Positions 2 through 54,557 of a stretch of 64,000 bases of DNA are shown here, piece by piece. How positions within the stretch are numbered: the stretch's first letter is position 1; the number at the start of each line of letters is the position of its first letter. A program made the position numbers and the translations under genes. Location: the IMG/VR virus record IMGVR_UViG_3300010403_000705, positions 310,001 to 374,000 of that record; one strand, written 5' to 3'. Under the pieces are notes generated by a model that had not been told where the DNA came from, did no database searches, and worked only from the letters and a program-made list of their open reading frames with translations.

Positions 2-739
2 ATTGATCCAGAGGCTTTGATGTCAGATGAGGATGAGCATGTTGCTTTTGGCTGCATGCCATCTTTCAATGTGTATGGGTTGAAAGTAAATATGCCTCCT
101 GCACGTGAGGTGCCTTTTAGGTCTGCCGGCGGTCATATTCACTTCGGTACTAACCGACTGACGCATGCTCAAGCTGAACCAATGGTAAAAGCATTAGATG
201 CTATTCTGGGAGTAGCGTGCGTGTCTTTGTTCGCAGAGTTTGATGATCCTAATCGTCGAAAGCTGTATGGTCTTCCTGGAGAGTATCGATTGCCTCCGCA
301 TGGATTAGAGTATCGACCTCTGAGTAACGCTTGGTTGTCGCATCCTATGATTACTAATTTGGTAATCGACCTAGCTCGTAAGTGTGTAGTCTTTGGTCGT
401 AAGAATCTATTGTCTTCGTTTTGGAAGACAACAGAAGAGGAAACGATTGATACTATCATTCGATGCGATGTGGAAACATCGCATAAAATCTTAGAGCGTA
501 ACCGAGAAGTTCTCAAACAGCTTCTCAAAGCTTCCTATCAACGTGCTGGTGATAGTGATCTTGAGACATTATTTAATGTCTTCAAGAATGGTATCGGCTC
601 AGCTATCAAAAATCCTCGTGATTTCGAGACTAATTGGAAGTTCAAAACTGGGTGGATTGCACATTATGGCGGCGCGGGTGAGCCCAATGTTGCGACGTTT
701 ATGAGTAATCGTCGTCACAATCCCAAGTATCTTATGTGA
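2..739 (+). CDS. phiEco32-like COOH-NH2 ligase type 2, paralog 1 (5'-truncated by window edge)
   Basis: Motifs FGCMPSFN, RSAGGHIHFG, PGEYRLPPHGLEYRPLSNAWL; the frame is open back to position 2; highly similar to the next two ORFs. Confidence 0.85.
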   Translation: MDPEALMSDEDEHVAFGCMPSFNVYGLKVNMPPAREVPFRSAGGHIHFGTNRLTHAQAEPMVKALDAILGVACVSLFAEFDDPNRRKLYGLPGEYRLPPHGLEYRPLSNAWLSHPMITNLVIDLARKCVVFGRKNLLSSFWKTTEEETIDTIIRCDVETSHKILERNREVLKQLLKASYQRAGDSDLETLFNVFKNGIGSAIKNPRDFETNWKFKTGWIAHYGGAGEPNVATFMSNRRHNPKYLM

Positions 740-758
740 TCATTTGTATATATTTTGT

Positions 759-794
759 TTATGGGGAAGATTGGTTAACCAATCTTCCCCATAA
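759..794. terminator. Perfect 36-bp palindrome (hairpin) after ligase 1
   Basis: TTATGGGGAAGATTGGTT|AACCAATCTTCCCCATAA, intergenic, T-rich flanks. Confidence 0.7.
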
Positions 795-888
795 TATTTT
801 GTAATATAGCAATGCTTAGCTTACCCATCCTCACTGTATAAGCATCATGTAAGTACATAATGTAAGCCTTTGGTTAAAAGGATTCAAA

Positions 889-2256
889 ATGAAGATTAAA
901 ATTTCTGATTTGATTAGCACGGGACATTCTGCTGTTGTTCAACATAAGAGTGGATATATTGGTCCGACTTATTATTTGAAGCGAAATAGTAATGAACTTT
1001 CTCGCGATTTGTATGCTGATGGATATTTTTTACCGGATGAAAAGTTTATTATCGTCAATGCTTATAGGCAAGGCGAAGTAACGCATATGTCAGTGGCTAA
1101 TTCATATGATTTTAAAGTACGTGGATATTATGTACCTTATGATCAGGAATTTGATCTGTTAGAGAATGATGATCTTAGTTTTGCTTGGGACGAGGTTAGA
1201 AAATCTAATGTGTCAAGATATCTTCATCATGGATTTACTATTGGTTCTGATCCAGAGATTTTTGTTGAGGATCGAAATGGAAATATGATTCCTGCTTTCC
1301 TATTCCTTGGTTCTAAGGAAGAACCCAATCATACTGCGATAGGTGATCATTATGGTTCCGATGGTGGTCATCCTATGTACTGGGATGGTTTTCAAGCAGA
1401 GTTTACCACTCGTGCCGGACATTGCTTGGAGTATCATACAGACTCAGTAGCTGCTGGTATTAAAGGCGTCTATGATGCAGCTAGGAAAAAATTTCCAGAT
1501 GCACGTCTTAGCTGTCGTAATGTTTTTGATATCTCTAATGATATGCTACAAACTGCTAAAGAAGAGCATGTAGCTTTCGGATGTATGCCGAGCTTTAATG
1601 CTTATGGATTGCAGGTGAATATGCCTCCTGCTCGTGAGGTGTCTTTCAGATCTGCTGGCGGTCATATTCATTTTGGTCTAGGTAAAATTACCAATGACTC
1701 TGCTGTCAGTATTGTTAAAGCATTAGATATGATTGTCGGTGTATCCTGTGTTAGTCTTTTCGATAAATTTGATAATCGAAAAAGAAGAATGATGTATGGT
1801 CTTCCTGGAGAGTATCGATTGCCTCCGCATGGATTAGAGTATCGTACACTTTCCAATGCCTGGCTTATTCATCCTTTCATTATGAATCTGGTGATCGATA
1901 TTGCTAGAAAAGCTGTGGTATTGAGCCAACGTGGTTGGCTAGATCTGTGGGTAAGTGACGAAGAAGAAACGATTGATACTATTATGAGATGCGATGTTGA
2001 GCAAGCTCGTAAGTCTTTGGAAACAAATAAAAAGACATTTATCAATCTGCTTAGTGCTTCTTATATATGGGCTTCTCAAATAGATTTAAATATATTATAT
2101 AATATCTTTTTTAATGGTCTAAAGAGTGTCATTCATGATCCAAATGATTTTGTAGGAAATTGGAAAATCAATGGTGGGTGGTTTCGTTTAGCGAGGGCTG
2201 ATAAGTGTAATGTTAGTCGAAGCATGGAAGACCTTCGTATTGGCAATAAGTTATAG
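889..2256 (+). CDS. phiEco32-like COOH-NH2 ligase type 2, paralog 2
   Basis: FTIGSDPEIFV, DGFQAEF, GGHIHFG, GEYRLPPHGLEYRTLSNAWL; about 115-aa variable N-terminal domain. Confidence 0.85.
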   Translation: MKIKISDLISTGHSAVVQHKSGYIGPTYYLKRNSNELSRDLYADGYFLPDEKFIIVNAYRQGEVTHMSVANSYDFKVRGYYVPYDQEFDLLENDDLSFAWDEVRKSNVSRYLHHGFTIGSDPEIFVEDRNGNMIPAFLFLGSKEEPNHTAIGDHYGSDGGHPMYWDGFQAEFTTRAGHCLEYHTDSVAAGIKGVYDAARKKFPDARLSCRNVFDISNDMLQTAKEEHVAFGCMPSFNAYGLQVNMPPAREVSFRSAGGHIHFGLGKITNDSAVSIVKALDMIVGVSCVSLFDKFDNRKRRMMYGLPGEYRLPPHGLEYRTLSNAWLIHPFIMNLVIDIARKAVVLSQRGWLDLWVSDEEETIDTIMRCDVEQARKSLETNKKTFINLLSASYIWASQIDLNILYNIFFNGLKSVIHDPNDFVGNWKINGGWFRLARADKCNVSRSMEDLRIGNKL

Positions 2257-2329
2257 AGTCACCCATCGTATACGATGATAGACTAATAAGGCAAGCAATA
2301 AGTTAACACACAAATTTCAAGGAACGAAA

Positions 2330-3742
2330 ATGAAGATTACTGATATTCGAAATAGTGGACGATCAATGGCGGTGAAAGTAGCGAAGCGTGATGTCTCTGC
2401 CAGATATTATTTGCGGCGAGATGGTACGCCCACTCAGGATGTACAGATTGAACCATATTCTTTTCCATCGGATGTGTTTGGTATTATTGCAACATACGAT
2501 CGTCATGATTATGTAATTGCAAGCATCATTGATTTCTGTAATTCCAGCCGAGCGCCGCGGAACTATTATATTCCACTGGATTTGGAGTTTACAGAGATTA
2601 CTGCTGACGATCCTTTGTACCAAAAATGGGTCACGTATCAAACGCAGCATCTAGAGATCATGTTGCCTCATGATTTCAGTATTGGTTCTGATCCAGAGAT
2701 TTTTGTTGAGGATAAGGATGGTACGCATATTCCAGCTTTCCTATTCCTTGGATCTAAGGAGGCGCCTGATCGTACTCCTTCTTGGGGAGGTTACGATAAT
2801 AATGGTGGATGCACTATGTATTGGGATGGCTTCCAGGCAGAATTCACAACCAAAGCTGGTGGTTGTTTAGAGTATCATACAGACTCAGTAGCGGCTGGAC
2901 TTCGTGGAGTATATGATGCTGCCCGTCAGAAGTTTCCTAATGCCAGACTTAGCTTGAAGAGTGTAGTAGATATTCCCCATAGCATGTTGGAAGAAGCTGA
3001 AGATCAGTATGTAGCTTTCGGATGTATGCCCAGCTTTAATGCTTATGGAATTAGAGTAAACATGCCTCCTGCACGTGAGGTGCCTTTTAGATCTGCAGGT
3101 GGTCATATTCATTTTGGGATTGGTAAGCTTACTCAAGAGCAAGCTACTCCCATCGTCAAGGCGCTGGATGCTATTCTGGGAGTAGCGTGCGTGTCTTTGT
3201 TTGCTAACTATGATAGTCGAAAACGTAGGCATCTGTATGGTCTTCCTGGAGAGTATCGATTGCCTCCGCATGGATTAGAGTATCGACCTCTGAGTAACGC
3301 TTGGTTGTGTCACCCTTTCATCATGAATCTGGTGATTGATGTGGCAAGAAAGGTACTTGTCCTTGGGCAAAAGGGTTTGCTGAATCTGTGGCAAGGAAAT
3401 GAAGAAGAAACCATTGACATCATGATTCGTTCAGATGTAGAAGGTGCTCGTGAATCCTTAAAAAGAAACAAGGAAATCTTCATCAAAATTCTGGAATCTT
3501 GCTATGTTATTTATAATCGTTGGGCAACTCCTCAGGACCTAGAAATGTTCTATGGTATTTTCCTCAATGGATTAGAAACTGCTATCGCAGATCCTAGCAA
3601 TTTTGTCAAGAATTGGTATCTGAATGGCACTTCACGTGATAACTATGATGATAATGGTAGGGCTTGGCGCAAGCAAGCCTCTGGTTTACACGCCAATGTA
3701 AAGCGTAGCATGGATACGCTTCGCGATGGTAAGAAGCTGTAA
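2330..3742 (+). CDS. phiEco32-like COOH-NH2 ligase type 2, paralog 3
   Basis: FSIGSDPEIFV, DGFQAEF, GGHIHFG, GEYRLPPHGLEYRPLSNAWL. Confidence 0.85.
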   Translation: MKITDIRNSGRSMAVKVAKRDVSARYYLRRDGTPTQDVQIEPYSFPSDVFGIIATYDRHDYVIASIIDFCNSSRAPRNYYIPLDLEFTEITADDPLYQKWVTYQTQHLEIMLPHDFSIGSDPEIFVEDKDGTHIPAFLFLGSKEAPDRTPSWGGYDNNGGCTMYWDGFQAEFTTKAGGCLEYHTDSVAAGLRGVYDAARQKFPNARLSLKSVVDIPHSMLEEAEDQYVAFGCMPSFNAYGIRVNMPPAREVPFRSAGGHIHFGIGKLTQEQATPIVKALDAILGVACVSLFANYDSRKRRHLYGLPGEYRLPPHGLEYRPLSNAWLCHPFIMNLVIDVARKVLVLGQKGLLNLWQGNEEETIDIMIRSDVEGARESLKRNKEIFIKILESCYVIYNRWATPQDLEMFYGIFLNGLETAIADPSNFVKNWYLNGTSRDNYDDNGRAWRKQASGLHANVKRSMDTLRDGKKL

Positions 3743-3749
3743 ATCGGTA

Positions 3750-3791
3750 CATGAGGTTATTGGAGGCGTGAATGCCTCCAATAACCTCATG
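3750..3791 (+). terminator. 18-bp stem hairpin after ligase 3
   Basis: CATGAGGTTATTGGAGGC-GTGAAT-GCCTCCAATAACCTCATG followed by GTTTT. Confidence 0.7.
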
Positions 3792-3804
3792 GTTTTAAGA
3801 TAAT

Positions 3805-4827
3805 ATGCTTTCACTCCTGTTTAAGGTAATAGTTATGACGATAAGACCCTGGATGCAGCAATCACAAGGTCAACAAAGATTAAGAATTGCTGAGCCTTCA
3901 CCAACTCCTAAACAAGAAGTTGATACTGAAAAAAGGTTTGCTGGTGATTGGAATAAGGATGATGAGAACGCAGACACACAACCTGGTATTGGAACAACTA
4001 TCATTAAACATTCACCTCAACAGGAGATGAGTAAAGTGTATACCCCCTATAGTTATAAACCTACGCCGTCAGAAACTTCAAACAAAATATTTGTTTATGG
4101 GACGTGCATGACAGGTTTTTCTTTGAATAAAGTAGTAGCTCGCGACGGTTATATTAGTCCGGCGACAACAACCGCTGTTTATCGTATGATTAATATGTAT
4201 GATGAATATCCCACTATTTTAACGGGTGGTCATACTCGTATCATAGGACAACTATATTATACCACTAGGCGAACTTTGGAATTTTTGGATTCGGTTATGG
4301 ATTGTCCGAGCTTACATCATCGTGATATTATCTCCTTAGAAGATGGAACGCGTGCACATGCCTACATTATCAATCGCTGGAAGACTCCTCTTCGAGAAGA
4401 AGAAATTTTATCAGGAGACTGGATTGAATGGAAGAAGAACTCTCGAACACGAGAGAAAGAAAGAAAAGAAAAATTCAAAGCATTGATGGCTCGTGGTAAA
4501 GCAGAAGCTAAAGCTCGCCAACAAGCTATGGCAGACGATGTTATGACTACTGCTAATGATACAAAACTTACCAGTGTAGTCAAACGCTGGGACCCTATTA
4601 GAGGCGAATTCACTTATTCATTGAATACCTCGGAATCTAAAGTGAGCCCGAATGTTAGTGATAAGAGCATCTCTTCTGTAAGAAATGTTCATATCTCTGA
4701 TATTCCATTATCGGATTTAAAAATCAAATTGATTAATGACGGTATTAATCCTGAAGATTTAGAAGAGCATGCCATACGAATTGCATGCATGTCACGCTAT
4801 GGCTTATGGTATCAGATTGAAGATTAG
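3805..4827 (+). CDS. Gamma-glutamylcyclotransferase (AIG2-like) domain protein with N- and C-terminal extensions
   Basis: IFVYGTCMTG...YPTI...IIGQLY...LEFLD...HHR...AHAY...SGDW; catalytic Glu position appears altered (LDSVM vs LDRVE); start may be 3835. Confidence 0.75.
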   Translation: MLSLLFKVIVMTIRPWMQQSQGQQRLRIAEPSPTPKQEVDTEKRFAGDWNKDDENADTQPGIGTTIIKHSPQQEMSKVYTPYSYKPTPSETSNKIFVYGTCMTGFSLNKVVARDGYISPATTTAVYRMINMYDEYPTILTGGHTRIIGQLYYTTRRTLEFLDSVMDCPSLHHRDIISLEDGTRAHAYIINRWKTPLREEEILSGDWIEWKKNSRTREKERKEKFKALMARGKAEAKARQQAMADDVMTTANDTKLTSVVKRWDPIRGEFTYSLNTSESKVSPNVSDKSISSVRNVHISDIPLSDLKIKLINDGINPEDLEEHAIRIACMSRYGLWYQIED

Positions 4828-22674: not shown

Positions 22675-23664
22675 ATGCCCGTAATTAATTGGACTGAAAT
22701 TACATCTTTTCATAACATTAACAAATATGCTAAAAGCGTTCCAGAGATACTTAACCATTATCCATCGGTAATGTATCGGGCTAAAATTAAGCTACATGGC
22801 AATAATGCGGCAATTCAAATTCATTCTGATGATCGCGTTTTGGCTCAAAGTAGAACTACAGAGCTTAGCCCAGGTAATGATTTAGCTGGATTTGCGAAAT
22901 GGGTAGAAGAAAATGCAAGTGCCTGGCGTAATAATGCTTCAGGTCTTATTGTATTTGGTGAGTGGTGTGGGCATGGTATCCAAAGTGGAACAGCTCTCAA
23001 TAACTTACATGAAAAGATTTTTGCTGTTTTTGCTGCACGATGGTTAGATGACGAGGATTCTCTAATCGTAGATCCAGAAGAATTACAAGAGCTTCTTAAA
23101 GGAAAAGACATTCCTGGAATGTATATACTTCCATGGCACAATGATCCAATTGAAATAGACTGGTGCGGCAATGAAAGCTCATTAGATGTTAAGGCTTCGT
23201 TAATTAATGAATGGGTGTTAGCTATTGAACAAAATGATCCCTGGGTAGAGAAGACCTTTAACATTAAAGGTACTGGAGAGGGATTGGTATTCTACCCTAT
23301 ATCTAAACAACACTTGGGTTATAAGAATTATTGTAATTTAGTTTTTAAAGCCAAAGGTGAGGCTCATCGCGTTGTTAAGACTAAGACATCTGTACAGGTA
23401 AATCCAGAAGCTGTGGAAAATAGCAATTTATTTGTAGATATGGTTCTTACCACAGCTCGATTAGAGCAAGGTGTACGTTCTGCTAGTGTAGATGGATCGC
23501 TAACATTTAGTAATAAATTTATTGGAAAATTTATAAATTGGATTCTAAATGATGTGCAAAAAGAAACAACAGCAGAACTAGAAGCCTCTGGATTGCAGTG
23601 GAAACAAGTACAAAAATTACTAGGAGATAAGTCACGTAATTGGTATCTAAGTAAAATGAAATGA
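22675..23664 (+). CDS. RNA ligase, Rnl2 family
   Basis: Motif I KLHGNN, QSR, FGEWCG.GIQ, FAVF, GEGLV, FKAK. Confidence 0.8.
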   Translation: MPVINWTEITSFHNINKYAKSVPEILNHYPSVMYRAKIKLHGNNAAIQIHSDDRVLAQSRTTELSPGNDLAGFAKWVEENASAWRNNASGLIVFGEWCGHGIQSGTALNNLHEKIFAVFAARWLDDEDSLIVDPEELQELLKGKDIPGMYILPWHNDPIEIDWCGNESSLDVKASLINEWVLAIEQNDPWVEKTFNIKGTGEGLVFYPISKQHLGYKNYCNLVFKAKGEAHRVVKTKTSVQVNPEAVENSNLFVDMVLTTARLEQGVRSASVDGSLTFSNKFIGKFINWILNDVQKETTAELEASGLQWKQVQKLLGDKSRNWYLSKMK

Positions 23665-23759
23665 TTAAGTGTATTATATACTTGCTTACAATAATATTAG
23701 ATCTGTAATACCCATCAATCTTATATGGTATGTTAGAAGTTGAAAATAGGAAAAACTAA

Positions 23760-24413
23760 ATGAGCGAATCTATAATAGATAGATGCCAACGACATACAAT
23801 TGCTGTACGCCATACTTTGCTTGGTAAGAACTGGTACAGTGCTTTGGAAGCCATGGAATTTGCGAAAGGATTTCATCAAGGCACCAGAAAAGACAGAATA
23901 ACTCCAGAGTTCTCTCATCAAATAGAGATAGCGGGATTTCTTTTAACGTTATCATCAGCTTTACTATTTCCAGAAGAAACCATTACGGTTTCGTTCTTAC
24001 ATGATTGTCCGGAGGATTACGATATAGGATTCGAAGAACTGGAATCTAAGTTTGGTGCTAAAGTATCTAACGCTACCAAACTACTTACTAAAACTCATCG
24101 AGGGCATAAGCGTAATCCGGATACATATTTCATTGATATGATAAGCGATCCGATTGCTTCTGTTGTTAAGGGAGCCGACAGAATCAATAATCAAAGCACT
24201 ATTGTTGGGGTGTTTTCTAGAGAGAAACAAAATTCTTATATAACAGAAACAGTCCAACAGATCATTCCTATGATCAAATCTGCTAGGAAGAGCTGTCCTA
24301 GGCAATTCAATGTATATCAAAATATTCTTTTTGTGCTGAGAAGCCAACTTGATATGATTCGTGCAATCCATGCCGCACAAGATTCAATGAAAGAAAATAA
24401 AAATGCCGACTAA
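23760..24413 (+). CDS. HD-domain hydrolase, RelA/SpoT-hydrolase (Mesh1/SAH)-like
   Basis: FA...H.G.RKD..TP...H, LHDCPED, LLTK, VKGADRINN. Confidence 0.8.
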   Translation: MSESIIDRCQRHTIAVRHTLLGKNWYSALEAMEFAKGFHQGTRKDRITPEFSHQIEIAGFLLTLSSALLFPEETITVSFLHDCPEDYDIGFEELESKFGAKVSNATKLLTKTHRGHKRNPDTYFIDMISDPIASVVKGADRINNQSTIVGVFSREKQNSYITETVQQIIPMIKSARKSCPRQFNVYQNILFVLRSQLDMIRAIHAAQDSMKENKNAD

Positions 24414-27385: not shown

Positions 27386-28306
27386 ATGATTCTAATTGGT
27401 TCGCGTGCTCTTATGATAAGAGCACCTTATATCCTTAATAGATCGCCTAAAGATTTTGATTGGATATGCACAGAGAAAGAATTTGATCATTGGATAACTG
27501 AACAATCATTTAAAGCACAACCTACAGATGTTTCTGTTATATCTGAGAATAAAAGAATTGTGCGAGGTGCAGTAAATTGTGAGTTTGAAATTATACGACC
27601 AGGGACTAGTTCTGAGCTTTTGCAAAGCTTAGTCTTTGAAGATTCAGAAACAATAGAGACTCCATTTGGATTGGTCCCTAGTCTTGATTTGTTATTTACA
27701 ATTAAATGCTCCCACAGGTATTTAAAGAACTCACCACATTTTTGGAAGAACTTGAGCGACTATCATTTAATGAAAAGAGTCGGTGCTCAAGTAAAAGATA
27801 ATCTTTCAAGTTTTCTTAAACTTAGAGAGAAAGAAACATATACTTATACTCATCCAAAATTAAATACTTCTAGAAAGAATTTTTTTAGTGATGATCAAGT
27901 ATCTTATGTATATGACCATGATTCTATTCACGAAGCAGTAAAACATTTAGATCGCCCAGCATATTCATTTTTCCAAAAAGATGGAGAAGAAGTAGCGTGC
28001 GATAAGAATAAATTTTTTGCTTGTTCTCGTGAAGTACAATTGTATTCTGTGGTAGAGGAGTCTGCTGTATTAGCAATTGAACGCAGTTTGGTTCCTTTTC
28101 CTGGTAAGTGGTCCCCAGAATATGCATGGAGGTTCGCTTTCTCCAAAGTATGCACAAGTATATCTTCTGGATGGTGGAGAGCTTTTGCTTATGATAATGC
28201 TTTGGATTGTCTGAGATTATATCCAGTTGATTATTGGAGTAAATTTCAGAAAGGATTATCTGATGGCTTAGTTAAGCCATTTAACCCATCCGCAAAAGCT
28301 TCATAG
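27386..28306 (+). CDS. Putative phage nucleotidyltransferase-fold protein
   Basis: N-terminal LIGSRA...PKDFD (GS + DxD), YDHDSIHE. Confidence 0.55.
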   Translation: MILIGSRALMIRAPYILNRSPKDFDWICTEKEFDHWITEQSFKAQPTDVSVISENKRIVRGAVNCEFEIIRPGTSSELLQSLVFEDSETIETPFGLVPSLDLLFTIKCSHRYLKNSPHFWKNLSDYHLMKRVGAQVKDNLSSFLKLREKETYTYTHPKLNTSRKNFFSDDQVSYVYDHDSIHEAVKHLDRPAYSFFQKDGEEVACDKNKFFACSREVQLYSVVEESAVLAIERSLVPFPGKWSPEYAWRFAFSKVCTSISSGWWRAFAYDNALDCLRLYPVDYWSKFQKGLSDGLVKPFNPSAKAS

Positions 28307-28645: not shown

Positions 28646-28675
28646 TGAATTAATGTGTATTAGTTAAGTTTATAG

Positions 28676-28748
28676 AGTAGAATATTGTATCGGTAGCATA
28701 ACTTGGTTTAAATCCAGGAAAGTACAGGTTCAATTCCTGTTTCTACTT
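28676..28748 (+). tRNA. Atypical tRNA-like gene, anticodon TAA, short variable loop
   Basis: Acceptor AGTAGAA/TTCTACT; anticodon arm CTTGG-TTTAAAT-CCAGG; T arm ACAGG-TTCAATT-CCTGT; weak D stem; no CCA. Confidence 0.6.
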
Positions 28749-28850
28749 TAAATTAATTGATCAATTATTTTAGATGGATGTTCGTTTCATTCACTTGACG
28801 CCAAGAAAATTCAAAATTGATTCAAAATTAAACAGAAGGAATATTGTCTT

Positions 28851-29588
28851 ATGTTCAGAATTGTTCCATACAAGCGTACCAGTGAGTCAGCTAAATTAGT
28901 AGCTCAGAAAATGACCGAGTTAAGTGGAAGGCGTGTTGTTTCTGGAGAAGCAAGTTTAGATCATAGAAATATTTTATGGGGCAATTCAAGTGTACCGCTC
29001 GAAAATCTACAACCAGCAGCAGCTATTGGAATCGCCAAAAATAAGTTAAGCACCTTAGATAAATTAAAAAGTTCGAATGTTTCTATACCAGAATACACAA
29101 CTTCTAAATCTGTTGCTGAGGATTGGGTTCGCAATGGCATTGTTGTGGTAGCTCGCAAACTCTTAAATGGTTCAGAAGGTCGAGGCATTGTACTGTGTCG
29201 GCATCTTCCTTTAGAAGATGCACCTTTATATGTTAAACTAGTTGAGAAAGATAAAGAATTTAGAGTACACGTCTGTAACGGTGTTGCTATTGATTTGCAA
29301 GAGAAGAGACGAAAAAATGGCGCCCGAAACCCTGATGGCACCAGACCAGATGGAATTATTAGAAATATTGATAGCAACTGGGTATTTTGTCGAAACAATA
29401 TTGTTGAGCCACCTGGACTTCGTGTATTAGGTATAACGGCTGTTCAAGCACTTGGATTATTGTTTGGTGCTGTTGATGTAGTGCATAATACTAGAAATGG
29501 TAGTTTGCATGTACTAGAAATTAACACTGCGCCTGGACTATGTGATTCTACTGCGACCAAATATGCTCAGGCGTTTTTAAACCTTTGA
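28851..29588 (+). CDS. ATP-grasp ligase (RimK-like, phiEco32 type)
   Basis: AKNKL, GSEGRGI, KEFRVHV, IRN, FGAVDV, LEINTAPGL. Confidence 0.85.
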   Translation: MFRIVPYKRTSESAKLVAQKMTELSGRRVVSGEASLDHRNILWGNSSVPLENLQPAAAIGIAKNKLSTLDKLKSSNVSIPEYTTSKSVAEDWVRNGIVVVARKLLNGSEGRGIVLCRHLPLEDAPLYVKLVEKDKEFRVHVCNGVAIDLQEKRRKNGARNPDGTRPDGIIRNIDSNWVFCRNNIVEPPGLRVLGITAVQALGLLFGAVDVVHNTRNGSLHVLEINTAPGLCDSTATKYAQAFLNL

Positions 29589-29604: not shown

Positions 29605-31686
29605 ATGGATGAAGAAGAGAATGATTTAGTAAATGACGCAGAGCCAGTACAACCCATCGAACCACTAGATGTAGGAGCGGATGTTCCAGTAATAGCTCCA
29701 GTGCCAATACCACCACCACCACCTCTTCCTCAACCTCGTCCTGTTCCTTTTATTAATAATTATGAAAGGATTAGACCACAAGCGATTTGGATGGAAGATG
29801 AACCCCGTAATGACTACTGGGAATATGAAAACCAACAGGCTCGTGAGGAGGATTTTAGGGTAAGGTTGCAACGTTATAGACAGGTCGCCGCCGCCGGCGT
29901 CGCGCCGTGGCTTAATAGAGATTGGGAAATTTGGTCGCAACAGAACGTGGGCGCAGCTCACCCAGTACCTAATCCTCATATTCCGGTGCCCAGAAACCCA
30001 AATATAAATCAATTTATAAACCAAATTATTAATAATGAGGAAATAAGAGAGCGTCACATGAATTATGATCAGTTGGTAAGAAGATATCCATCATTGGTAG
30101 ACAGGTATCTTCCTGATTTATCCAATAAGGCTAATGCTTTGAGTGCATTACGAAGTATTGAATCTGATAGAAATGCAACTCTAGAAGAGAAAACGGCACT
30201 TCGTGATTATGTAGGCAATCACGAAGTAGCATCTGTTTATAACTATCAGTGGTGTGTTGACTGCGAATCAATGGTAGGGCATCCTAATCATACACATTGT
30301 CCACATTGTATTTATCCATGTACTGTTGTTGAGCCGGGTCATGTTAATCCTCCATCCAATACTCAGTTAGCAGTATGTGGATTTTGTGGAGAATGTTGTC
30401 GTAGTAAAGGTCATAGATACTGTCCTACTTGCAATACTCACAGTGATAGATTATGTCGACATTGCAGTAAATGTACTGCTTGCTGTGCTTGTCAACTTTG
30501 TCCCGCACGAGGTTGTCAAGAGATGCAAGAATGTAATGATTGTTGTAATTGTCTCGATCATTGTACCTGTCCAGCACTACAATCTAATGGTACATATGGT
30601 AAATCTTTTCCAGCTTTCAAAAAGAAAGAGCGTCGACTGTTTGATTGCCAACGTCTAGCTGGTGTAGAGTGGGAGTACAATCGATTATCTACACAAAGAT
30701 ATTTCGACCATTGGGTAAAGAAGTGGTTAGCGGATCGGCACCAAGATGATTCATGCGGTTATGAAGCCGTTACAGCTCCCATCGCTGGCGACTACATGGT
30801 CAAATGTATAGAGGCTTTGGGAAAAGTTTTTGAAAAGAGTAAGGCGTCAATTGATAATCGATGTTCAATTCATGTACATGCAGATGCAAAAGACCTTCAG
30901 TGGTCAGATATGTTCAGACTGTTGAAAGTCTATTCGATTGTAGAACCTGTTCTTTATATGTTAGCAGGGCAAGAACGCCTCGATAATAGATATTGTGTGC
31001 CCTGTGGTAAAGATTATGCTGCTGCTCTTGAAAGGATTGATCGTAAAGATGCAGTCATGGCTGTAGCATTTACTCCCATTACACGTGATGGAAGAAAAAG
31101 TGAAGTCAATCTTATTCCTGATAATGGTCGCAATTCACAGCGTGCCAAACCAGGAAAACGTGCCGATAATCATGCGTATTGTCGACGCAAAGGATTGAAC
31201 ATTCTTCCTTGGTTGGCTGGTCGAGGACCTCGACCAAACACTCCAGTTAGCATCGTAACTCAAGCCAATGATACAATTGAAAAAATTGCGCAACGCAATA
31301 ATGTTTCAATTGCGGCATTGATGCGTTGGAATAAGATTAAACCTGGTACGCGTTTTGCGGCTGGACAAAGACTTATCGTCAATAAGCGTATTGTGGCACC
31401 TGATACTACAGTGGAGTTTAGAATTCACCCTAACACACATGATGCTAATCGTGTTATTAATTGGGTGAAAGTTATACTGCGTTTGGTTGATTGGGCAGCT
31501 AAATCAACTGATAACGATTTAGAGAAACTTCCTAAGTCAGCCCTTAGGATTCTCTGTCAAGTCATTGCACCCGAATGTGCTCCTTGGATCATGTCGAGAG
31601 TGCAAGAGTGGCGTAAGGAAACATCAAAAATCAATGGACGTCACGAGCGTCGCATTAGCCTAAAGGGCGGAAAGTACAGTTACTAA
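29605..31686 (+). CDS. Putative amidoligase (Amidoligase_2/GCS-like) with Pro-rich N-terminus, Cys-rich region and inserted LysM domain
   Basis: GVEWE, DDSCGYEAVTAP, CSIHVH, TVEFR; LysM-like TQANDTIEKIAQRNNVSIAALMRWNKI...GQRLIV; many CxxC. Confidence 0.8.
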   Translation: MDEEENDLVNDAEPVQPIEPLDVGADVPVIAPVPIPPPPPLPQPRPVPFINNYERIRPQAIWMEDEPRNDYWEYENQQAREEDFRVRLQRYRQVAAAGVAPWLNRDWEIWSQQNVGAAHPVPNPHIPVPRNPNINQFINQIINNEEIRERHMNYDQLVRRYPSLVDRYLPDLSNKANALSALRSIESDRNATLEEKTALRDYVGNHEVASVYNYQWCVDCESMVGHPNHTHCPHCIYPCTVVEPGHVNPPSNTQLAVCGFCGECCRSKGHRYCPTCNTHSDRLCRHCSKCTACCACQLCPARGCQEMQECNDCCNCLDHCTCPALQSNGTYGKSFPAFKKKERRLFDCQRLAGVEWEYNRLSTQRYFDHWVKKWLADRHQDDSCGYEAVTAPIAGDYMVKCIEALGKVFEKSKASIDNRCSIHVHADAKDLQWSDMFRLLKVYSIVEPVLYMLAGQERLDNRYCVPCGKDYAAALERIDRKDAVMAVAFTPITRDGRKSEVNLIPDNGRNSQRAKPGKRADNHAYCRRKGLNILPWLAGRGPRPNTPVSIVTQANDTIEKIAQRNNVSIAALMRWNKIKPGTRFAAGQRLIVNKRIVAPDTTVEFRIHPNTHDANRVINWVKVILRLVDWAAKSTDNDLEKLPKSALRILCQVIAPECAPWIMSRVQEWRKETSKINGRHERRISLKGGKYSY

Positions 31687-31687
31687 T

Positions 31688-32674
31688 ATGTGTGGACTGA
31701 GTGGTTTTATTGGATTGCCGTTATCTAAAGATGAAAAGCTGATGCTTGTTTTAGGTCTCGGCGATGGCATCGACAATCGTGGTGGACATAGTTGTGGATA
31801 TGTCAGCGTTGCTGAGGATGGTAATCTTCAGTATGCCAGAAAAAAAGGCACATGGATTCGTGCTCGTATTAGATTTACTGAGGGCGCTGCTTCTGAAGTA
31901 TGTATGATGCATGCTCGTTGGGCAACTTGTGGTAATAAAGAGGATCCAATGAATGCGCATCCGTTTTCTATTCGACGTAATGGACGTGTAGTTATGTGGG
32001 GCGCACATAACGGTATGGTTCCTGATGCTTTTAAGAGTGCTAAGGCACATGGTCGCGATATCAATGTAGATTCTCAAGAAATTTTTGAGCTTCTTGCTGA
32101 TAAGAATTACGAAGGCATTCGAGAGATGTCTGGCTATGGTGTGATTACTTGGATTGATACTGATCATCGTGATTATGTTAATCTCGCCAGGCTTTCATCT
32201 CATTCCGATATTTGCGTAGTCAGTGTCAAGGGTGGTGGTGTAGTCTGGGCATCTACTTGGAAAATTCTTAAGGAAGCTCTTAAGTTAGCTGATCTAGAAG
32301 TGGATCGTGAGTTTAAGATTGACGAAATCGGTCGAGTATATCGTATTCGAGCTGATGGTGTCTTCAAAACCAAACTAGATGGTATCAAAGTTGGAACCTA
32401 TAATAAGTTGACCAAAACACAAACCACCGTTGGTTCTACGACAACTGTAGATACACCTTCAGTGCCATCTGACGAGATAGATGAAACACTTATTGTAGAA
32501 ACAAAAGTGCCAGGAGAATCAGAATATAAATATGCTTCCTCTTATGGTACTGGAGCCTCTTCAACTGTTACGAATGGCTCTGGAGTTTATTCCCCTGCCT
32601 TTTCTGCATGGCAAGGCAAGCAAGGCAATGTAGATGATGAAGAAGCGTATCGTCAATGGTGTGGGTCTGAATAA
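31688..32674 (+). CDS. Class II (Ntn) glutamine amidotransferase, paralog B
   Basis: MCGL, NRGGHS.G, HARWAT.G, NAHPF, AHNG, VDS. Confidence 0.85.
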   Translation: MCGLSGFIGLPLSKDEKLMLVLGLGDGIDNRGGHSCGYVSVAEDGNLQYARKKGTWIRARIRFTEGAASEVCMMHARWATCGNKEDPMNAHPFSIRRNGRVVMWGAHNGMVPDAFKSAKAHGRDINVDSQEIFELLADKNYEGIREMSGYGVITWIDTDHRDYVNLARLSSHSDICVVSVKGGGVVWASTWKILKEALKLADLEVDREFKIDEIGRVYRIRADGVFKTKLDGIKVGTYNKLTKTQTTVGSTTTVDTPSVPSDEIDETLIVETKVPGESEYKYASSYGTGASSTVTNGSGVYSPAFSAWQGKQGNVDDEEAYRQWCGSE

Positions 32675-32680: not shown

Positions 32681-32726
32681 CATCTTTATCAGAAGCCTGG
32701 GATATCCCAGGCTTCTGATAAAGATG
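32681..32726. terminator. Perfect 46-bp palindrome
   Basis: CATCTTTATCAGAAGCCTGGGAT|ATCCCAGGCTTCTGATAAAGATG; no U-tract. Confidence 0.6.
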
Positions 32727-35770: not shown

Positions 35771-36295
35771 ATGAAGAATGAATTAAATATTACTGATTAT
35801 GTAGTTCAAGATTTGATGGAAGGAGAGTATGATAAAAGCATCTTACATATTCCTTTATTCCCAGTAAACATGCGTTTATTCCATACCAGCCCTCAATTTC
35901 ATAGTTTGATCATGCAGGTCATTGCATACATGAAATTTAAACTACAAAATAAGTTTGCAGGCTATTCTCAGCCTCGTGGGATTTCTGGGGCTAACTTAGG
36001 AATTCCATGGAATATTATTGGTTACCGTATTAATAGCAAAATTCATTTTATGATTAATCCGGTGGTAAAAAATAGATCCGTTGAAACGGAAATGAGAAGT
36101 TCAAATTGTGGATCTGTTAGATTAAAAGATAATATTTTCGTTGAACGACATATCTGGGTTGATGTAGAATATTACGATGTAGAAGGCGTGCTACACATGG
36201 ACCGTTTCTACGGTGCAGATGGCGGATATACAATTCAACATGAGATTGAAAACAATCTTGGTATTTTAATTACAGATAAGAATAAGGAGAACTGA
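35771..36295 (+). CDS. def: Divergent peptide deformylase-like protein
   Basis: GISGANLG, MINP, SNCGS, V.R...V.V.YYD..G, QHEIENNLGILI. Confidence 0.65.
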   Translation: MKNELNITDYVVQDLMEGEYDKSILHIPLFPVNMRLFHTSPQFHSLIMQVIAYMKFKLQNKFAGYSQPRGISGANLGIPWNIIGYRINSKIHFMINPVVKNRSVETEMRSSNCGSVRLKDNIFVERHIWVDVEYYDVEGVLHMDRFYGADGGYTIQHEIENNLGILITDKNKEN

Positions 36296-39768: not shown

Positions 39769-40761
39769 ATGCCGAACGATATCAGAATCTTCACAGGACG
39801 TTCGAATATAGATTTGTTTGATAAGTTTTTCGAATTTAATAAGTTTGATGAATTACTAGGAATCCCTAGCTCTTTAACTAAAGGTAAAGGGATTGTTACT
39901 CAATTTTCTGATGGCGAAATATTTTTCACTTGTCAAGAGTCTGTTAGAGGAATGGATTGTTATATATTACAATCTACTTGTGCCCCGCATAATGATAATA
40001 TCATGGAGCTCTGTATTATGTCAGACGCTTTAAAGAGAGCTTCAGCGGCAAGTGTAACTGCTGTAATTCCATATTTCGGATATGCTCGTCAGGATAGACA
40101 AGTAGCTCCTCGTACACCTATTACGGCTAAACTTGTTGCTGATATGATCACTACATCAGGGATAGATAGAGTTGCTATTTTAGATGTGCATTCGTCTCAA
40201 ACACAAGGTTTTTTCAACACTCCACTGTTTGATAATTTACAAGCTACTTCTTTCTTGTGCCAAGATTTAATAAAACATTATTGTAATTGGTTCCCTCATG
40301 ATGCGGTTATTGTTTCTCCTGATGTGGGTGGTGTAAAAAGAGCTCGTAATTTTTCTAAAAAACTTAATGGATGCGGATTAGCTATTATTGATAAAAGGAG
40401 AGATAAACCTAATGAGTCTGAAGTAATGAATATTATCGGAGATGTCAAGGGTAAATATTGTGTTCTTGTAGATGATATGATTGACACTGCGGGGACTCTA
40501 TGTCAAGCGGCGCAAGCTTTACAAGAAGCTGGAGCTATTAGCGTAATTGGTTGCGCTACCCATCCTATTTTGTCTGGTTCTGCTATTACAAGGATTAATG
40601 ATAGTCCACTTACAGAAGTGATAGTTTCAGACACAATACCTTTGTCTGAATCTGCCAAAAAATGCAAAAAAATCAGAACGGTATCCTGTGCAACGATGCT
40701 ACGTATTGCGATTGATAGGATTCATCGTTGCGGTTCAGTATCTGAAATTTTTGCGGAATAA
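39769..40761 (+). CDS. prs: Ribose-phosphate pyrophosphokinase
   Basis: FSDGE, PYFGYARQDR, DVH, VSPDVGGVKRA, DKRR, LVDDMIDTAGT, THPILSG. Confidence 0.95.
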   Translation: MPNDIRIFTGRSNIDLFDKFFEFNKFDELLGIPSSLTKGKGIVTQFSDGEIFFTCQESVRGMDCYILQSTCAPHNDNIMELCIMSDALKRASAASVTAVIPYFGYARQDRQVAPRTPITAKLVADMITTSGIDRVAILDVHSSQTQGFFNTPLFDNLQATSFLCQDLIKHYCNWFPHDAVIVSPDVGGVKRARNFSKKLNGCGLAIIDKRRDKPNESEVMNIIGDVKGKYCVLVDDMIDTAGTLCQAAQALQEAGAISVIGCATHPILSGSAITRINDSPLTEVIVSDTIPLSESAKKCKKIRTVSCATMLRIAIDRIHRCGSVSEIFAE

Positions 40762-53021: not shown

Positions 53022-54557
53022 ATGTCTAAAATAGAATGGACAATAGATCGAAAAAATGATTCCTGTTGCCGGATTAATAATTCTCTAGGTATAGATATTG
53101 ATCTTTTTGCAAATGATGATGTGGTTATTGATAGAGATGCCTTTCAAGAACTTTTTGATTTCTTAGATGTGCAACGCGCAATTTCTGATATTTCTTCTGC
53201 AGAAAAATCAGGAAATTTTTCTTTTTTTGGAAACCCTAATGCTGGAATTACTAAAGTTGTTTTAACTCCTGATTTTCACAAAGGCTCTGGTATTCCTATT
53301 GGAACAGTGGTGGAGAATAATGGTTTTGTTATTCCAGCAGCCATTGGAAATGATATTTGTTGTGGAATGAGATTATTAGTAACAGATATGCCAGTAACTA
53401 AATTAGAAAATCATTGGGGAACTATTCAAAAACGTTTGAGAGAAATCTTCTTTCAAGGACAACGAAACATTCCTATGTCTCCACGACAAAGAGAATCTGT
53501 TCTTCGTTATGGGTTACCAGGATTATTAGAAACCATTAAAGACAATGAAAATACAGGTATTTATCAACATTTTAATGTTAAAAATCAAATAGCTGATCTA
53601 GCCAGAGCTCATAATAATGGTGGATTTAATACCGACAGATTGTTTGGTTTTGATAAGTTGATACGCAGTTCTGGAGCCATTGACGGTAGAGATCCACAAA
53701 TTGGTTCAGTAGGCGGTGGTAATCATTTTGTAGAGTTTCAAAAAATCGAAGAAATTTTGTGTAAACAAACTGCCAGAGAAATGAATATTAACAGTGGTAA
53801 CCTAGCTATTATGATTCATTCTGGATCTGTTAGTTTAGGACACGCAGTTGGCTGGCATTTTATTGATCGTGCAAGAGAACTCTTTCCGTCTCAAATAAAA
53901 AGTCCAAAAAATAATTTCTTTGTTCTACCTACAGTTGGACCATATGCTAAAGAAGGCAAATTTTATCTAAATAGTATGAGAAATGCAGCGAATTTTGCTT
54001 TTGCTAATAGGTTATTTTTAGGTCTTATGGCGATCAAAGCCGTACAAGAAGCAATTGGTTGTTATGTAGATTCCAGACTTATTTATGACGCTCCTCATAA
54101 TTTAGTTTTTGAAAAGAATGATGGTCAATTTATACACCGTAAAGGCGCTACACCCGCAGAAGGTCCAGACAAAGTAGACCAATGGATTGGAAAACCAGTT
54201 ATTATTCCTGGGTCAATGGGCAGTGCTAGTTATTTGCTAACTGGATTAGGCAATCCAGAAGCCTTAGAAAGCGCATGTCACGGTGCAGGACGATTAATGC
54301 CTCGCGGAGTAGCCTCTCATGTAGATGATAAGATTTTTGATGATCAGACATGTGATTTGCGTATTGTGACTGCTGTAGATCCAAAATCGCCTCAAATGCA
54401 AATGAGAAAAGATATTATGATTAAATATAAAGAGAGAGTTAAAGAAGAAGCACCTTATGCTTATAAACCAATTACACCAATTATTCGATCTATTGAAGAT
54501 GCACACATTGCTAGAGTAGTAGCTAAGCTAATGCCATTGTGCACGGTAAAAGGATAG
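53022..54557 (+). CDS. rtcB: RtcB family RNA ligase
   Basis: PDFHKG.GIPIG, GNDICCG, GSVGGGNHFVE, HSGS, HN, HRKGA, PGSMG, HGAGR, EEAP.AYK. Confidence 0.95.
   Translation: MSKIEWTIDRKNDSCCRINNSLGIDIDLFANDDVVIDRDAFQELFDFLDVQRAISDISSAEKSGNFSFFGNPNAGITKVVLTPDFHKGSGIPIGTVVENNGFVIPAAIGNDICCGMRLLVTDMPVTKLENHWGTIQKRLREIFFQGQRNIPMSPRQRESVLRYGLPGLLETIKDNENTGIYQHFNVKNQIADLARAHNNGGFNTDRLFGFDKLIRSSGAIDGRDPQIGSVGGGNHFVEFQKIEEILCKQTAREMNINSGNLAIMIHSGSVSLGHAVGWHFIDRARELFPSQIKSPKNNFFVLPTVGPYAKEGKFYLNSMRNAANFAFANRLFLGLMAIKAVQEAIGCYVDSRLIYDAPHNLVFEKNDGQFIHRKGATPAEGPDKVDQWIGKPVIIPGSMGSASYLLTGLGNPEALESACHGAGRLMPRGVASHVDDKIFDDQTCDLRIVTAVDPKSPQMQMRKDIMIKYKERVKEEAPYAYKPITPIIRSIEDAHIARVVAKLMPLCTVKG

What the first reader, a model, noticed from the sequence alone, without database searches (positions are those of the whole stretch)
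31252..31380. LysM domain inserted inside the amidoligase catalytic core
Seen: between the GLN(ILPW) segment and the TVEFR motif sits a ~43-aa LysM-like sequence (TQANDTIEKIAQRNNVSIAALMRWNKIKPGTRFAAGQRLIV). Established: LysM binds GlcNAc-containing glycans such as peptidoglycan. Inference: direct architectural evidence that this amidoligase acts on peptidoglycan or lipid II precursors. The protein also has a long Cys-rich multi-zinc segment and a Pro-rich N-terminus.
Basis: partly seen in the sequence, partly recalled or inferred. Interest (0 to 1): 0.7.

Follow-up and report, generated by a model that had tools for sequence, protein, structure and literature searches.

The report
LysM domain inside phage amidoligase
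A giant soil bacteriophage carries an ATP-dependent ligase with a complete sugar-binding LysM module spliced into a loop beside its active site; this hints, but does not prove, that this long-unexplained phage enzyme set works on cell-wall building blocks.

Summary
Window 31252-31380 encodes residues 550-592 of a 693-aa ORF (29605-31686, +). They score above the Pfam LysM cut-off, model as a beta-alpha-alpha-beta fold, and superpose on the peptidoglycan-binding LysM of E. faecalis AtlA (1.6 A, 41% identity). The module lies between invariant motifs of a glutamine-synthetase-fold Amidoligase_2 domain.

It is a clade-specific insertion of about 50 aa in a loop that is 2-9 aa shorter in relatives. 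It occurs only in about 14 close homologues from ~430-450 kb soil megaphages, not in 160+ other family members. It was probably gained once and is under purifying selection.

The gene is the middle of a tight trio: a RimK/LysX-like ATP-grasp, the amidoligase, and a class-II glutaminase with all glutamine-binding residues. This is the uncharacterised phiEco32-type phage amidoligase system.

- The protein has no signal peptide or membrane segment and needs ATP, so it is cytoplasmic.
- A single LysM normally needs three to four sugars and does not bind disaccharide-peptides.
- LysM-less sister enzymes keep the same catalytic residues and operon.

Best reading (about 0.4): LysM is a substrate-capture arm for a GlcNAc-containing envelope precursor. 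This is a new variant of a known kind, of moderate interest.

The parts
28675..28749 (+). tRNA-Leu (anticodon UAA) in the 545-bp spacer just upstream of the ATP-grasp gene
   Evidence: Rfam tRNA, 49.6 bits; ARAGORN. No + strand ORF of at least 25 aa fills the spacer, apart from a 41-aa ORF (28774-28899) that runs into the ATP-grasp gene.
27386..28306 (+). DUF7277/DUF7275 protein, a conserved upstream neighbour of the cassette
   Evidence: Pfam DUF7275 at 4.5e-64 and DUF7277 at 2.7e-8. The same neighbour is present in relatives L005, L006 and L007. It shows weak structural likeness to AbiEii/NTP_transf_5 nucleotidyltransferases (TM about 0.4-0.6), which is a lead only.
28851..29588 (+). ATP-grasp ligase (245 aa), first gene of the trio
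   Evidence: PHROG 2599 at 3.6e-56, with weak Pfam RimK/ATP-grasp_3 matches. The AlphaFold2 model has pLDDT 94.2. Its closest solved folds are ArgX/LysX and RimK (E about 6e-13), followed closely by D-Ala-D-Ala ligases. It has more than 2,000 homologues, and sources call them RimK/glutathione-synthase type.
29605..31686 (+). Amidoligase ORF (693 aa). Domains: acidic, Pro-rich N-terminal tail (aa 1-150); conserved helical segment (aa 151-212); Cys/His-rich zinc-type module (aa 213-330); glutamine-synthetase-fold Amidoligase_2 core (aa 343-681) interrupted by LysM.
   Evidence: It starts 16 nt after the ATP-grasp stop and ends 1 nt before the GATase start codon.
30241..30594 (+). Cys/His-rich module (aa 213-330; 25 Cys and 9 His)
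   Evidence: Counts. Eight or more Cys columns are at least 90% conserved across the family. Only weak RING/zinc-finger-like PDB sequence matches were found, best E 0.004. Model pLDDT is 77-86.
30631..31224 (+). Amidoligase core, part 1 (aa 343-540). Invariant residues: R350, G353, E355, E357, D381, S383-C384-G385, E387, H423, H425, D430, E447, R458, R527, N532, P535, W536.
   Evidence: Alignments A1 and A2. Pfam Amidoligase_2 best stretch is aa 378-482. Structural match to YbdK and glutamine synthetase, Z 12.5.
31225..31392 (+). Clade-specific insertion (aa 541-596): basic linker GPRPNTPVS, LysM domain (aa 550-592, nt 31252-31380), and linker NKRI
   Evidence: Net charge is +8. pN is 0.16-0.30 against saturated pS.
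31393..31686 (+). Amidoligase core, part 2 (aa 597-693). It holds the invariant D600-x-T602-x-E604-F605-R606 strand and the C-terminal helices.
31688..32674 (+). Stand-alone class-II (Ntn) glutamine amidotransferase (328 aa) with a variable Ser/Thr/Gly-rich tail
   Evidence: Pfam GATase_6 at 4e-9. Invariant in 7 orthologues: C2, R77, H107-N108-G109 and D128-S129-x-E131. It follows the amidoligase gene in every relative inspected.
32681..32726 (.). Perfect 20-bp-stem palindromic hairpin 6 nt after the GATase stop; likely end of the transcription unit
17..4827 (+). Second amidoligase-type cluster: three tandem phiEco32-like COOH-NH2 ligase type-2 paralogues (17-739, 889-2256, 2330-3742) and an AIG2/GGACT gamma-glutamyl cyclotransferase-like gene (3805-4827)
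   Evidence: Pfam PF14395 at 9e-14, 2e-15 and 4e-12; PF06094 at 1.4e-13. PHROG 3815 and 2520.

Best explanation
The ORF is the Amidoligase_2 subunit (a glutamine-synthetase-fold carboxylate-amine ligase) of a three-gene phage operon. The operon reads: RimK/LysX-like ATP-grasp ligase, amidoligase, class-II glutaminase. It belongs to the phiEco32-type phage amidoligase system, and this megaphage also carries that system's type-2 COOH-NH2 ligases and GGACT gene about 25 kb upstream.

In one clade of ~430-450 kb soil megaphages the amidoligase gained a complete LysM module, probably once. The module sits in a basic, insertion-prone surface loop immediately before the catalytic DTTVEFR strand.

Most likely mechanism (inferred): LysM acts in cis as a substrate-capture arm. 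It holds a GlcNAc/MurNAc-containing envelope precursor next to the active site, on the cytoplasmic side. The precursor is most plausibly a peptidoglycan building block or another undecaprenyl-linked GlcNAc glycan. The ligase then phosphorylates a carboxylate of the attached peptide with ATP and converts it to an amide. The amine would be either ammonia released from glutamine by the adjacent glutaminase or an amino-acid amine. The ATP-grasp enzyme adds a further residue. The outcome would be an altered cell envelope, for example for superinfection exclusion or control of lysis.

Shown: the domain identities, the insertion site, the phylogenetic restriction, purifying selection, operon conservation, intact glutaminase residues, and a cytoplasmic-type sequence.

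Inferred: the ligand of LysM, the chemistry, and the biological outcome.
For: - LysM identity and fold.
- The main glycan-binding residues of AtlA LysM are retained (T557, I558, F584, plus the G-Q motif): with PMC4083421 read.
- The insert is under purifying selection. pN is 0.16-0.30 against 0.42-0.52 in the N-terminal tail, with pS saturated at 0.54-0.85. Its GC content equals that of the rest of the gene.
- The insertion loop is basic across 177 family members (K+R fraction 0.30 against 0.14 for whole proteins) and is a hot spot for insertions (9 to 66 aa between motifs). This fits a substrate-contacting arm.
- It lies eight residues before the invariant D-x-T-x-E-F-R strand.
- The glutaminase keeps the Ntn Cys and the R, N-G and D-S-x-E glutamine-binding residues. 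This fits ammonia supply to a GS-type ligase.
- The trio is tightly spaced and conserved.
- Later papers cite Iyer et al. 2009 as proposing cell-wall modification for the phage amidoligase/GATase pair.
- A peptide deformylase gene in the window argues for a bacterial host.
Against: - No signal peptide or transmembrane segment, so the enzyme cannot reach polymerised peptidoglycan.
- A single AtlA LysM needs at least 3-4 sugars and does not bind disaccharide-peptides. Lipid II and UDP-MurNAc-peptide are therefore weak canonical ligands.
- AtlA positions D37 and L38 are replaced by T and R here.
- LysM is absent from sister enzymes with identical invariant residues and the same operon.
- Other family members carry protein- or DNA-type accessory modules.
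- The ATP-grasp is structurally nearest to enzymes that extend protein C-termini (ArgX, LysX, RimK), although Ddl is almost as close.
- The genome has no Mur-ligase domain.
- The amidoligase-glutaminase complex prediction gave no answer.
Confidence: 0.4

Rival explanations
1. The system is a protein- or peptide-modifying (tagging) system. The ATP-grasp and amidoligase would add amino acids or amides to carboxylates of a host or phage protein, as RimK, LysX/ArgX or PafA do. LysM would be a lineage-specific add-on unrelated to the substrate, serving for example localisation, oligomerisation or regulation.
For: - The ATP-grasp model is closest to ArgX/LysX and RimK, which act on protein C-termini.
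- The amidoligase core also resembles PafA and Dop.
- Every family member has a protein-interaction-type accessory module: Cys-rich zinc module, pentapeptide repeats, SWIM, LIM or YEATS.
- Neighbouring genes concern translation and RNA repair: RNA ligase, peptide deformylase, RtcB, tRNAs.
- LysM-less sisters share all catalytic residues.
Against: - No conserved small carrier or tag gene lies in the cassette. The spacer ORFs are not conserved between relatives.
- The glutaminase keeps residues for free glutamine rather than looking like a peptidase.
- A selectively maintained canonical LysM with retained binding residues needs a reason.
- Ddl is nearly as close to the ATP-grasp as RimK.
Confidence: 0.25
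2. LysM binds a GlcNAc-containing ligand that is not the substrate, or a non-glycan ligand, as in cytoplasmic LysM proteins such as E. coli Kbp (from memory). It would act as an allosteric sensor or lid, or would tether the enzyme to wall debris or to the virion. The chemistry would take place on a small-molecule metabolite, for example synthesis of a gamma-glutamyl-type peptide together with the GGACT and type-2 ligases.
For: - The genome carries three type-2 COOH-NH2 ligases and a GGACT cyclotransferase, which are typical of small-peptide metabolism.
- The protein is cytoplasmic by sequence.
- Secondary LysM binding positions have diverged.
- The insert may have been lost in P0013 without loss of the enzyme.
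Against: - The AU test does not reject a single LysM clade, so no loss is required (p 0.195).
- The insertion sits next to the catalytic strand, in a loop that is basic family-wide. This suggests direct substrate contact.
- The Cys-rich and other large accessory modules are unusual for enzymes of small-molecule metabolism.
Confidence: 0.25
3. The LysM-like stretch is a chance resemblance, or a decaying neutral insertion without function.
For: It is restricted to a small clade, and LysM-less relatives evidently function.
Against: - The Pfam score is well above the cut-off.
- It is 41% identical to a solved LysM, with 1.6 A rmsd.
- It is conserved in 14 homologues down to 52% overall identity.
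- pN is far below the saturated pS and below that of the N-terminal tail.
Confidence: 0.03

Closest known systems
phiEco32-type phage amidoligase system (Iyer, Abhiman, Burroughs and Aravind 2009; Pfam PF12224 Amidoligase_2, PF14395 COOH-NH2 ligase type 2, GAT-II, ATP-grasp, AIG2/GGACT)
   Same: It has the same protein families and the same adjacency of amidoligase and class-II GATase, with an ATP-grasp upstream. Type-2 ligases and GGACT are also in the genome. The function is likewise not experimentally known, and a cell-wall or superinfection role has been suggested.
   Different: - The amidoligase is much larger: it has a Pro-rich tail and a roughly 120-aa Cys/His module.
- It carries a LysM inserted in the catalytic domain. 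No paper holding both terms describes this.
- The system is split into two clusters about 25 kb apart in a 433-kb genome.
LysM carbohydrate-binding modules of secreted peptidoglycan hydrolases (E. faecalis AtlA 2mkx; T. thermophilus NlpC/P60 4uz2; MltD 1e0g)
   Same: It has the beta-alpha-alpha-beta fold and 41% identity to AtlA LysM. The T-L/I and hydrophobic-x-x-G-Q binding positions are retained.
   Different: - It is a single copy, not a tandem array.
- It is inserted within an enzyme domain rather than appended at a terminus.
- The host protein has no export signal and needs ATP.
- The equivalents of D37 and L38 are not conserved.
YbdK/GCS2, glutamine synthetase, gamma-glutamylcysteine ligase and PafA/Dop (glutamine-synthetase-fold carboxylate-amine ligases)
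   Same: It shares the core fold (Z 12.5 to 1r8g and 1tt4; Z about 12 to many GS structures). It also has conserved Glu, His and Arg residues on the sheet strands.
   Different: - Identity is only 10-14%.
- A profile search of PDB sequences does not find these proteins.
- It has different accessory domains and no oligomerisation N-domain of GS.
- Its substrate is unknown.
MurT/GatD and AsnB/LtsA peptidoglycan stem-peptide amidation systems (from memory)
   Same: The proposed logic is the same: an ATP-dependent ligase activates a stem-peptide carboxylate, and a glutaminase supplies ammonia.
   Different: - The folds are not homologous. MurT is a Mur ligase and GatD is a class-I GATase.
- Here the pair is a GS-fold ligase plus a class-II GATase, and the genome has no Mur-ligase domain.
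- Activity on peptidoglycan is untested.

Membership tests
LysM domain (Pfam PF01476) | Profile score above the curated gathering cut-off | tested here: met
   34.2 bits against 20.9, E 2.4e-8; 39 bits in the genome scan.
LysM domain (Pfam PF01476) | Beta-alpha-alpha-beta fold of about 45 residues | tested here: met
   The AlphaFold2 model has strands 397-402 and 440-445 and helices 409-415 and 420-427. Foldseek to 2mkx gives target TM 0.81 and rmsd 1.6 A. This is a predicted model, not an experimental structure.
LysM domain (Pfam PF01476) | Conservation of the glycan-groove residues shown by mutagenesis in AtlA LysM (T13, L14 and I39 as major; D37 and L38 as secondary) | tested here: inconclusive
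   T557, I558 and F584 match the three major positions. D37 and L38 are replaced by T582 and R583 (alignment; residue roles from PMC4083421).
LysM domain (Pfam PF01476) | Binding to GlcNAc-containing glycans (peptidoglycan or chitin) | not testable with these tools
   Needs pull-down, ITC or NMR experiments.
Secreted or cell-wall-associated LysM proteins | Signal peptide or membrane anchor giving access to the wall | tested here: not met
   The N-terminus is acidic (MDEEEND...). The maximum 19-residue Kyte-Doolittle mean is 1.25, so no transmembrane segment is predicted.
Amidoligase_2 (PF12224) / glutamine-synthetase-fold carboxylate-amine ligases | Profile match above the cut-off and a GS/YbdK-like fold | tested here: met
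   46.4 bits against 22. Z 12.5 to YbdK 1r8g and 1tt4, and about 12 to GS, over model residues 194-532.
Amidoligase_2 (PF12224) / glutamine-synthetase-fold carboxylate-amine ligases | Conserved metal- and phosphate-binding Glu, His and Arg residues on the active-site strands | tested here: met
   E355, E357, H423, H425, E447, R527, E604 and R606 are invariant in 49 homologues. Their catalytic roles are inferred by analogy, not mapped residue by residue.
Amidoligase_2 (PF12224) / glutamine-synthetase-fold carboxylate-amine ligases | ATP-dependent amide-bond formation | not testable with these tools
   Needs an enzyme assay.
phiEco32-type phage amidoligase system | Amidoligase_2 adjacent to a class-II GATase, with an ATP-grasp and type-2 COOH-NH2 ligase/GGACT in the same phage | tested here: met
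   The adjacency is conserved in relatives.
Class-II (Ntn) glutamine amidotransferase | N-terminal catalytic Cys plus the R, N-G and D-S-E glutamine-binding motifs | tested here: met
   C2, R77, H107-N108-G109 and D128-S129-x-E131 are invariant in 7 orthologues. The motif roles are recalled from PurF and GlmS.
MurT/GatD-type peptidoglycan amidotransferase | Mur-ligase domain partnered with a class-I GATase | tested here: not met
   The genome has no Mur_ligase_M match, and the glutaminase is class II. This is a functional analogy only.

The most novel reading that the evidence does not exclude
The LysM-bearing amidoligase, its glutaminase and the ATP-grasp form a phage-encoded pathway that has no homology to MurT/GatD or the Mur ligases. 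The pathway would amidate or branch peptidoglycan stem peptides on lipid-linked precursors from the cytoplasmic side. This would rewrite the host wall during infection, for superinfection exclusion, resistance to rival lysins or control of lysis. LysM would serve as an in-domain glycan clamp. If so, it would also reveal the substrate class of the whole phiEco32-type amidoligase system, which has been unexplained since 2009.
Probability: 0.2. Interest if true: 0.8.

Novelty: new variant of a known kind. Interest (0 to 1): 0.5.

Why it matters
Phage amidoligase, GATase and ATP-grasp sets occur in thousands of phage genomes: the profile search found 9,397 representative clusters for the amidoligase alone. 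Phage papers routinely list them as auxiliary metabolic genes. None of the papers read here reports an experimental test of their substrate. A selectively maintained glycan-binding module spliced next to the active site is the first built-in pointer to a substrate class. It turns a vague hypothesis of cell-wall modification into a direct test: LysM binding assays, and ligase assays on muropeptides or lipid-linked precursors, using the natural LysM-less sisters as controls. It is also an unusual example of a carbohydrate-binding module inserted inside a cytoplasmic ATP-dependent enzyme domain rather than appended to a secreted hydrolase.

Tried and rejected
- Close phage relatives: megablast and tblastn against GenBank phages gave no near match. 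There were only five distant amidoligases at 26-32% identity.
- Virus type: the T4 Gp23 and NCLDV capsid profile searches found nothing, and their controls were silent too, so they are uninformative. A bacterial host is inferred from PHROG matches, the peptide deformylase gene, tRNAs and the Atlas taxonomy.
- Iyer et al. 2009 (PMC3268129) is not held. Its proposals are quoted only through later papers.
- The profile search of PDB sequences did not reach YbdK or GS. It returned only weak zinc-finger-like matches to the Cys-rich part. The fold relation rests on structure comparison.
- Complex prediction for amidoligase plus glutaminase scored 0.00, reported as 'no answer'. It is evidence neither for nor against binding.
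- dN/dS: synonymous sites are saturated even between the closest homologues, so only pN contrasts between segments are used.
- Secondary loss of LysM in P0013: the quick tree nests P0013 among LysM bearers, but the AU test does not reject one LysM clade (p 0.195). Loss is therefore not claimed.
- Host identification: the scan of cellular genomes returned only distant relatives (24-35% identity, mostly MAGs). The only run that holds the sequence is a soil metagenome. The host remains unknown.
- A carrier or tag protein gene in the cassette: the small ORFs in the spacer are not conserved between relatives.
- Geometry of the LysM groove relative to the active site: the model coordinates are not exposed by the tools, so this was not measured.
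- The hypothesis of a chance or decaying insert was rejected.
Full report
**1. The observation**

Window 31252-31380 (+) translates to IVTQANDTIEKIAQRNNVSIAALMRWNKIKPGTRFAAGQRLIV. This is residues 550-592 of a 693-aa ORF at 29605-31686.

- Pfam places LysM (PF01476) at aa 553-592 with 34.2 bits, against a curated cut-off of 20.9 (E 2.4e-8). It places Amidoligase_2 (PF12224) on the same protein in two stretches (E 6e-12). PHROGs calls the protein an amidoligase.
- A six-frame scan of the whole genome finds this as its only LysM (39 bits).
- An AlphaFold2 model of aa 150-693, built on 49 homologues, has mean pLDDT 90.3. It shows the segment as strand-helix-helix-strand.
- Foldseek superposes that part on the peptidoglycan-binding LysM of E. 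faecalis AtlA (2mkx: target TM 0.81, rmsd 1.6 A, 41% identity) and on the T. thermophilus NlpC/P60 LysM (4uz2).
- A sequence search of the PDB with aa 541-600 returns AtlA (E 1e-4), then other wall-hydrolase LysMs and AtCERK1.

**2. Is it really inside the catalytic domain?**

Yes.

- In an alignment of 31, then 49, homologues the insert lies between two blocks of invariant residues. R527, N532, P535 and W536 (motif GLNILPW) come before it. D600, T602, E604, F605 and R606 (motif DTTVEFR) come after it.
- The rest of the model matches the glutamine-synthetase-fold carboxylate-amine ligases: YbdK (1r8g, 1tt4) at Z 12.5, many glutamine synthetases at about 12, glutamate-cysteine ligase, and PafA/Dop. 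The match covers model residues 194-532, spanning both sides of the insert.
- In LysM-less relatives the same loop is only 2-9 residues longer than the minimum.

**3. How widespread is the insert?**

- Of 55 clusters (90% identity) found with the catalytic region, 13 carry the insert.
- A profile search of 1.84 billion representative proteins finds 9,397 family members at E up to 0.001 (693 at 1e-30). Among the best 150, pooled with the earlier set, 182 proteins were examined. Only 14 have LysM, and all are close relatives of the query.
- The loop is an insertion hot spot. The distance between the two motifs ranges from 9 residues (82 of 177 proteins) to 66, and the other insertions are not LysM.
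- The loop is basic throughout the family: K+R fraction 0.30 against 0.14 for whole proteins, mean net charge +4.3.
- In IMG/VR the only close relatives are two genomes of 446.5 and 452 kb. Both carry the LysM.
- Cellular genomes hold only distant relatives.
- A tree built without the insert puts all LysM bearers inside one well-supported group (SH-aLRT 98). One LysM-less sequence (P0013) nests among them, but an AU test does not reject a single LysM clade (p 0.195). One gain is therefore the simplest history, and a loss is possible but not shown.

**4. Is the insert maintained?**

- Among the 13 LysM-bearing sequences in A2, mean pairwise identity is 48% in LysM, 51% in the Cys-rich module and 67-68% in the core.
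- Between the closest available genes, synonymous sites are saturated (pS 0.54-0.85). Non-synonymous differences are 0.16-0.30 in LysM, 0.11-0.12 in the core and 0.42-0.52 in the N-terminal tail.
- The insert's GC content (41.7%) equals that of the gene (42.1%).

It is an old, constrained part of the protein, not a decaying insertion.

**5. Context**

The window is bases 310001-374000 of a 432,844-bp virus record that CheckV estimates as 97% complete. The sequence is found in a soil metagenome run. Nearly all ORFs are on the + strand, and the GC content is about 35%.

The amidoligase is the middle gene of a tight trio:

- **ATP-grasp ligase, 28851-29588.** PHROG 2599 at 3.6e-56. The model (pLDDT 94) is closest to ArgX/LysX and RimK, with D-Ala-D-Ala ligases just behind.
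- **Stand-alone class-II glutamine amidotransferase, 31688-32674.** Its Ntn cysteine and its R77, H-N-G and D-S-x-E motifs are invariant in seven orthologues.
- **Spacing and boundaries.** Gene spacings are 16 and 1 nt. A tRNA-Leu lies in the upstream spacer, and a perfect 20-bp hairpin follows the last gene.

Conservation of the context:

- The order DUF7277/7275, ATP-grasp, amidoligase, GATase is conserved in related megaphage contigs without LysM. LysM-bearing relatives keep the ATP-grasp, amidoligase, GATase order; no DUF7277/7275 hit is on record for their upstream gene.
- More distant relatives keep the amidoligase-GATase pair.
- The same window also encodes three tandem phiEco32-like type-2 COOH-NH2 ligases and a GGACT cyclotransferase at 17-4827.

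Together these are the components of the phiEco32-type phage amidoligase system.

**6. What is known**

- Later papers cite Iyer et al. 2009 as suggesting that the phage amidoligase/GATase pair modifies the cell wall to prevent superinfection, or makes secondary metabolites. The original paper could not be read here.
- None of the papers read here reports an experimental test of the system's function.
- Only three papers hold both 'amidoligase' and 'LysM'. In the two listed, the two terms refer to unrelated things.
- JGI's automatic annotation of one homologue reads 'LysM domain/Putative amidoligase enzyme'. The architecture has therefore been machine-labelled but not discussed.

**7.

In favour:
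- The LysM is canonical.
- It keeps the equivalents of AtlA T13, L14 and I39. Alanine substitution of these reduces glycan affinity 60-80-fold (PMC4083421).
- It sits directly before the catalytic strand, in a loop that looks like a substrate-contacting arm.
- The partner glutaminase looks competent to deliver ammonia, as in known stem-peptide amidation systems.

Against calling it 'direct evidence':
- The protein has no export signal or membrane segment, and it belongs to an ATP-dependent fold. It therefore acts in the cytoplasm.
- A single AtlA LysM needs at least three to four sugars. It does not bind muramidase-released disaccharide-peptides or free stem peptides. Binding in cis alongside a peptide-binding active site could compensate.
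- The equivalents of AtlA D37 and L38 are not conserved.
- The LysM-less sisters have the same invariant residues and the same operon.
- Other family members carry pentapeptide repeats, SWIM, LIM or YEATS modules, which suggest varied macromolecular targets.
- No Mur-ligase domain is present in the genome.
- The complex prediction was uninformative.

**8. Verdict**

My best explanation (about 0.4) is that LysM is a lineage-specific, cis-acting capture arm. It would present a GlcNAc-containing envelope precursor to a GS-type ligase that amidates or extends a peptide carboxylate. The precursor is most plausibly a peptidoglycan building block or another lipid-linked glycan. Ammonia would come from the adjacent glutaminase.

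The main rivals are:
- a protein-tagging system in which LysM is not substrate-related (0.25);
- a sensor, tether or moonlighting role on an enzyme of small-peptide metabolism (0.25).

A chance or decaying insert is effectively excluded.

This is a new variant of a known, still unexplained, phage system. Its interest is moderate, mainly because it makes the old cell-wall hypothesis directly testable, with natural LysM-less controls.

Noticed in passing
window 17-4827 (+): Three tandem paralogous phiEco32-like COOH-NH2 ligase type-2 genes (17-739, 889-2256, 2330-3742) are followed by an AIG2/GGACT gamma-glutamyl cyclotransferase-like gene (3805-4827). This is a second amidoligase-type cluster about 25 kb upstream of the trio.
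   Followed up: partly
window 28675-28749 and 63523-63607 (+): There are two tRNA-Leu(UAA) genes. The first sits in the otherwise ORF-free 545-bp spacer directly upstream of the ATP-grasp gene.
   Followed up: partly
window 32681-32726: A perfect palindromic hairpin with a 20-bp stem lies 6 nt after the GATase stop codon. It is a likely transcription-unit boundary.
   Followed up: no
window 27386-28306 (+): The DUF7277/DUF7275 protein is a conserved upstream neighbour of the cassette in related megaphages. Atlas structure hits are weakly similar to AbiEii/NTP_transf_5 nucleotidyltransferases, which is a lead only.
   Followed up: partly
L003 10208-10723 (-) and L004 6264-6779 (-): In a 452-kb relative, an HNH endonuclease gene on the opposite strand is inserted between the amidoligase and GATase genes. 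A second HNH gene lies a few kb downstream.
   Followed up: no
window 30241-30594 (+); family-wide: The roughly 120-aa Cys/His-rich module (25 Cys, 9 His) precedes the amidoligase core and is conserved across the family. Other members instead or additionally carry pentapeptide repeats, repeats that look like MORN repeats by eye, SWIM, LIM or (in diatoms) YEATS domains.
   Followed up: partly
window 31225-31392 and homologous loops in P0001-P0182: The loop between N-I-x-P-W and D-T-T-V-E-F-R is an insertion hot spot (9 to 66 residues between the motifs). It is strongly basic across 177 family members, including several unrelated 28-56-residue insertions.
   Followed up: partly
window 22675-24413, 35771-36295, 39769-40761, 53022-54557 (+): The window holds translation, RNA-repair and nucleotide-metabolism genes typical of huge phages: RNA ligase, HD_4 hydrolase, peptide deformylase, PRPP synthetase and RtcB.
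   Followed up: no
window 32330-32674 (+): The GATase has a Ser/Thr/Gly-rich C-terminal tail of about 110 aa. Its length and sequence vary between orthologues.
   Followed up: no
window 29605-31686: The amidoligase gene is 42% GC, against 35% for the window as a whole. The 28-32 kb block is the second most GC-rich 4-kb block of the window, after the first.
   Followed up: no
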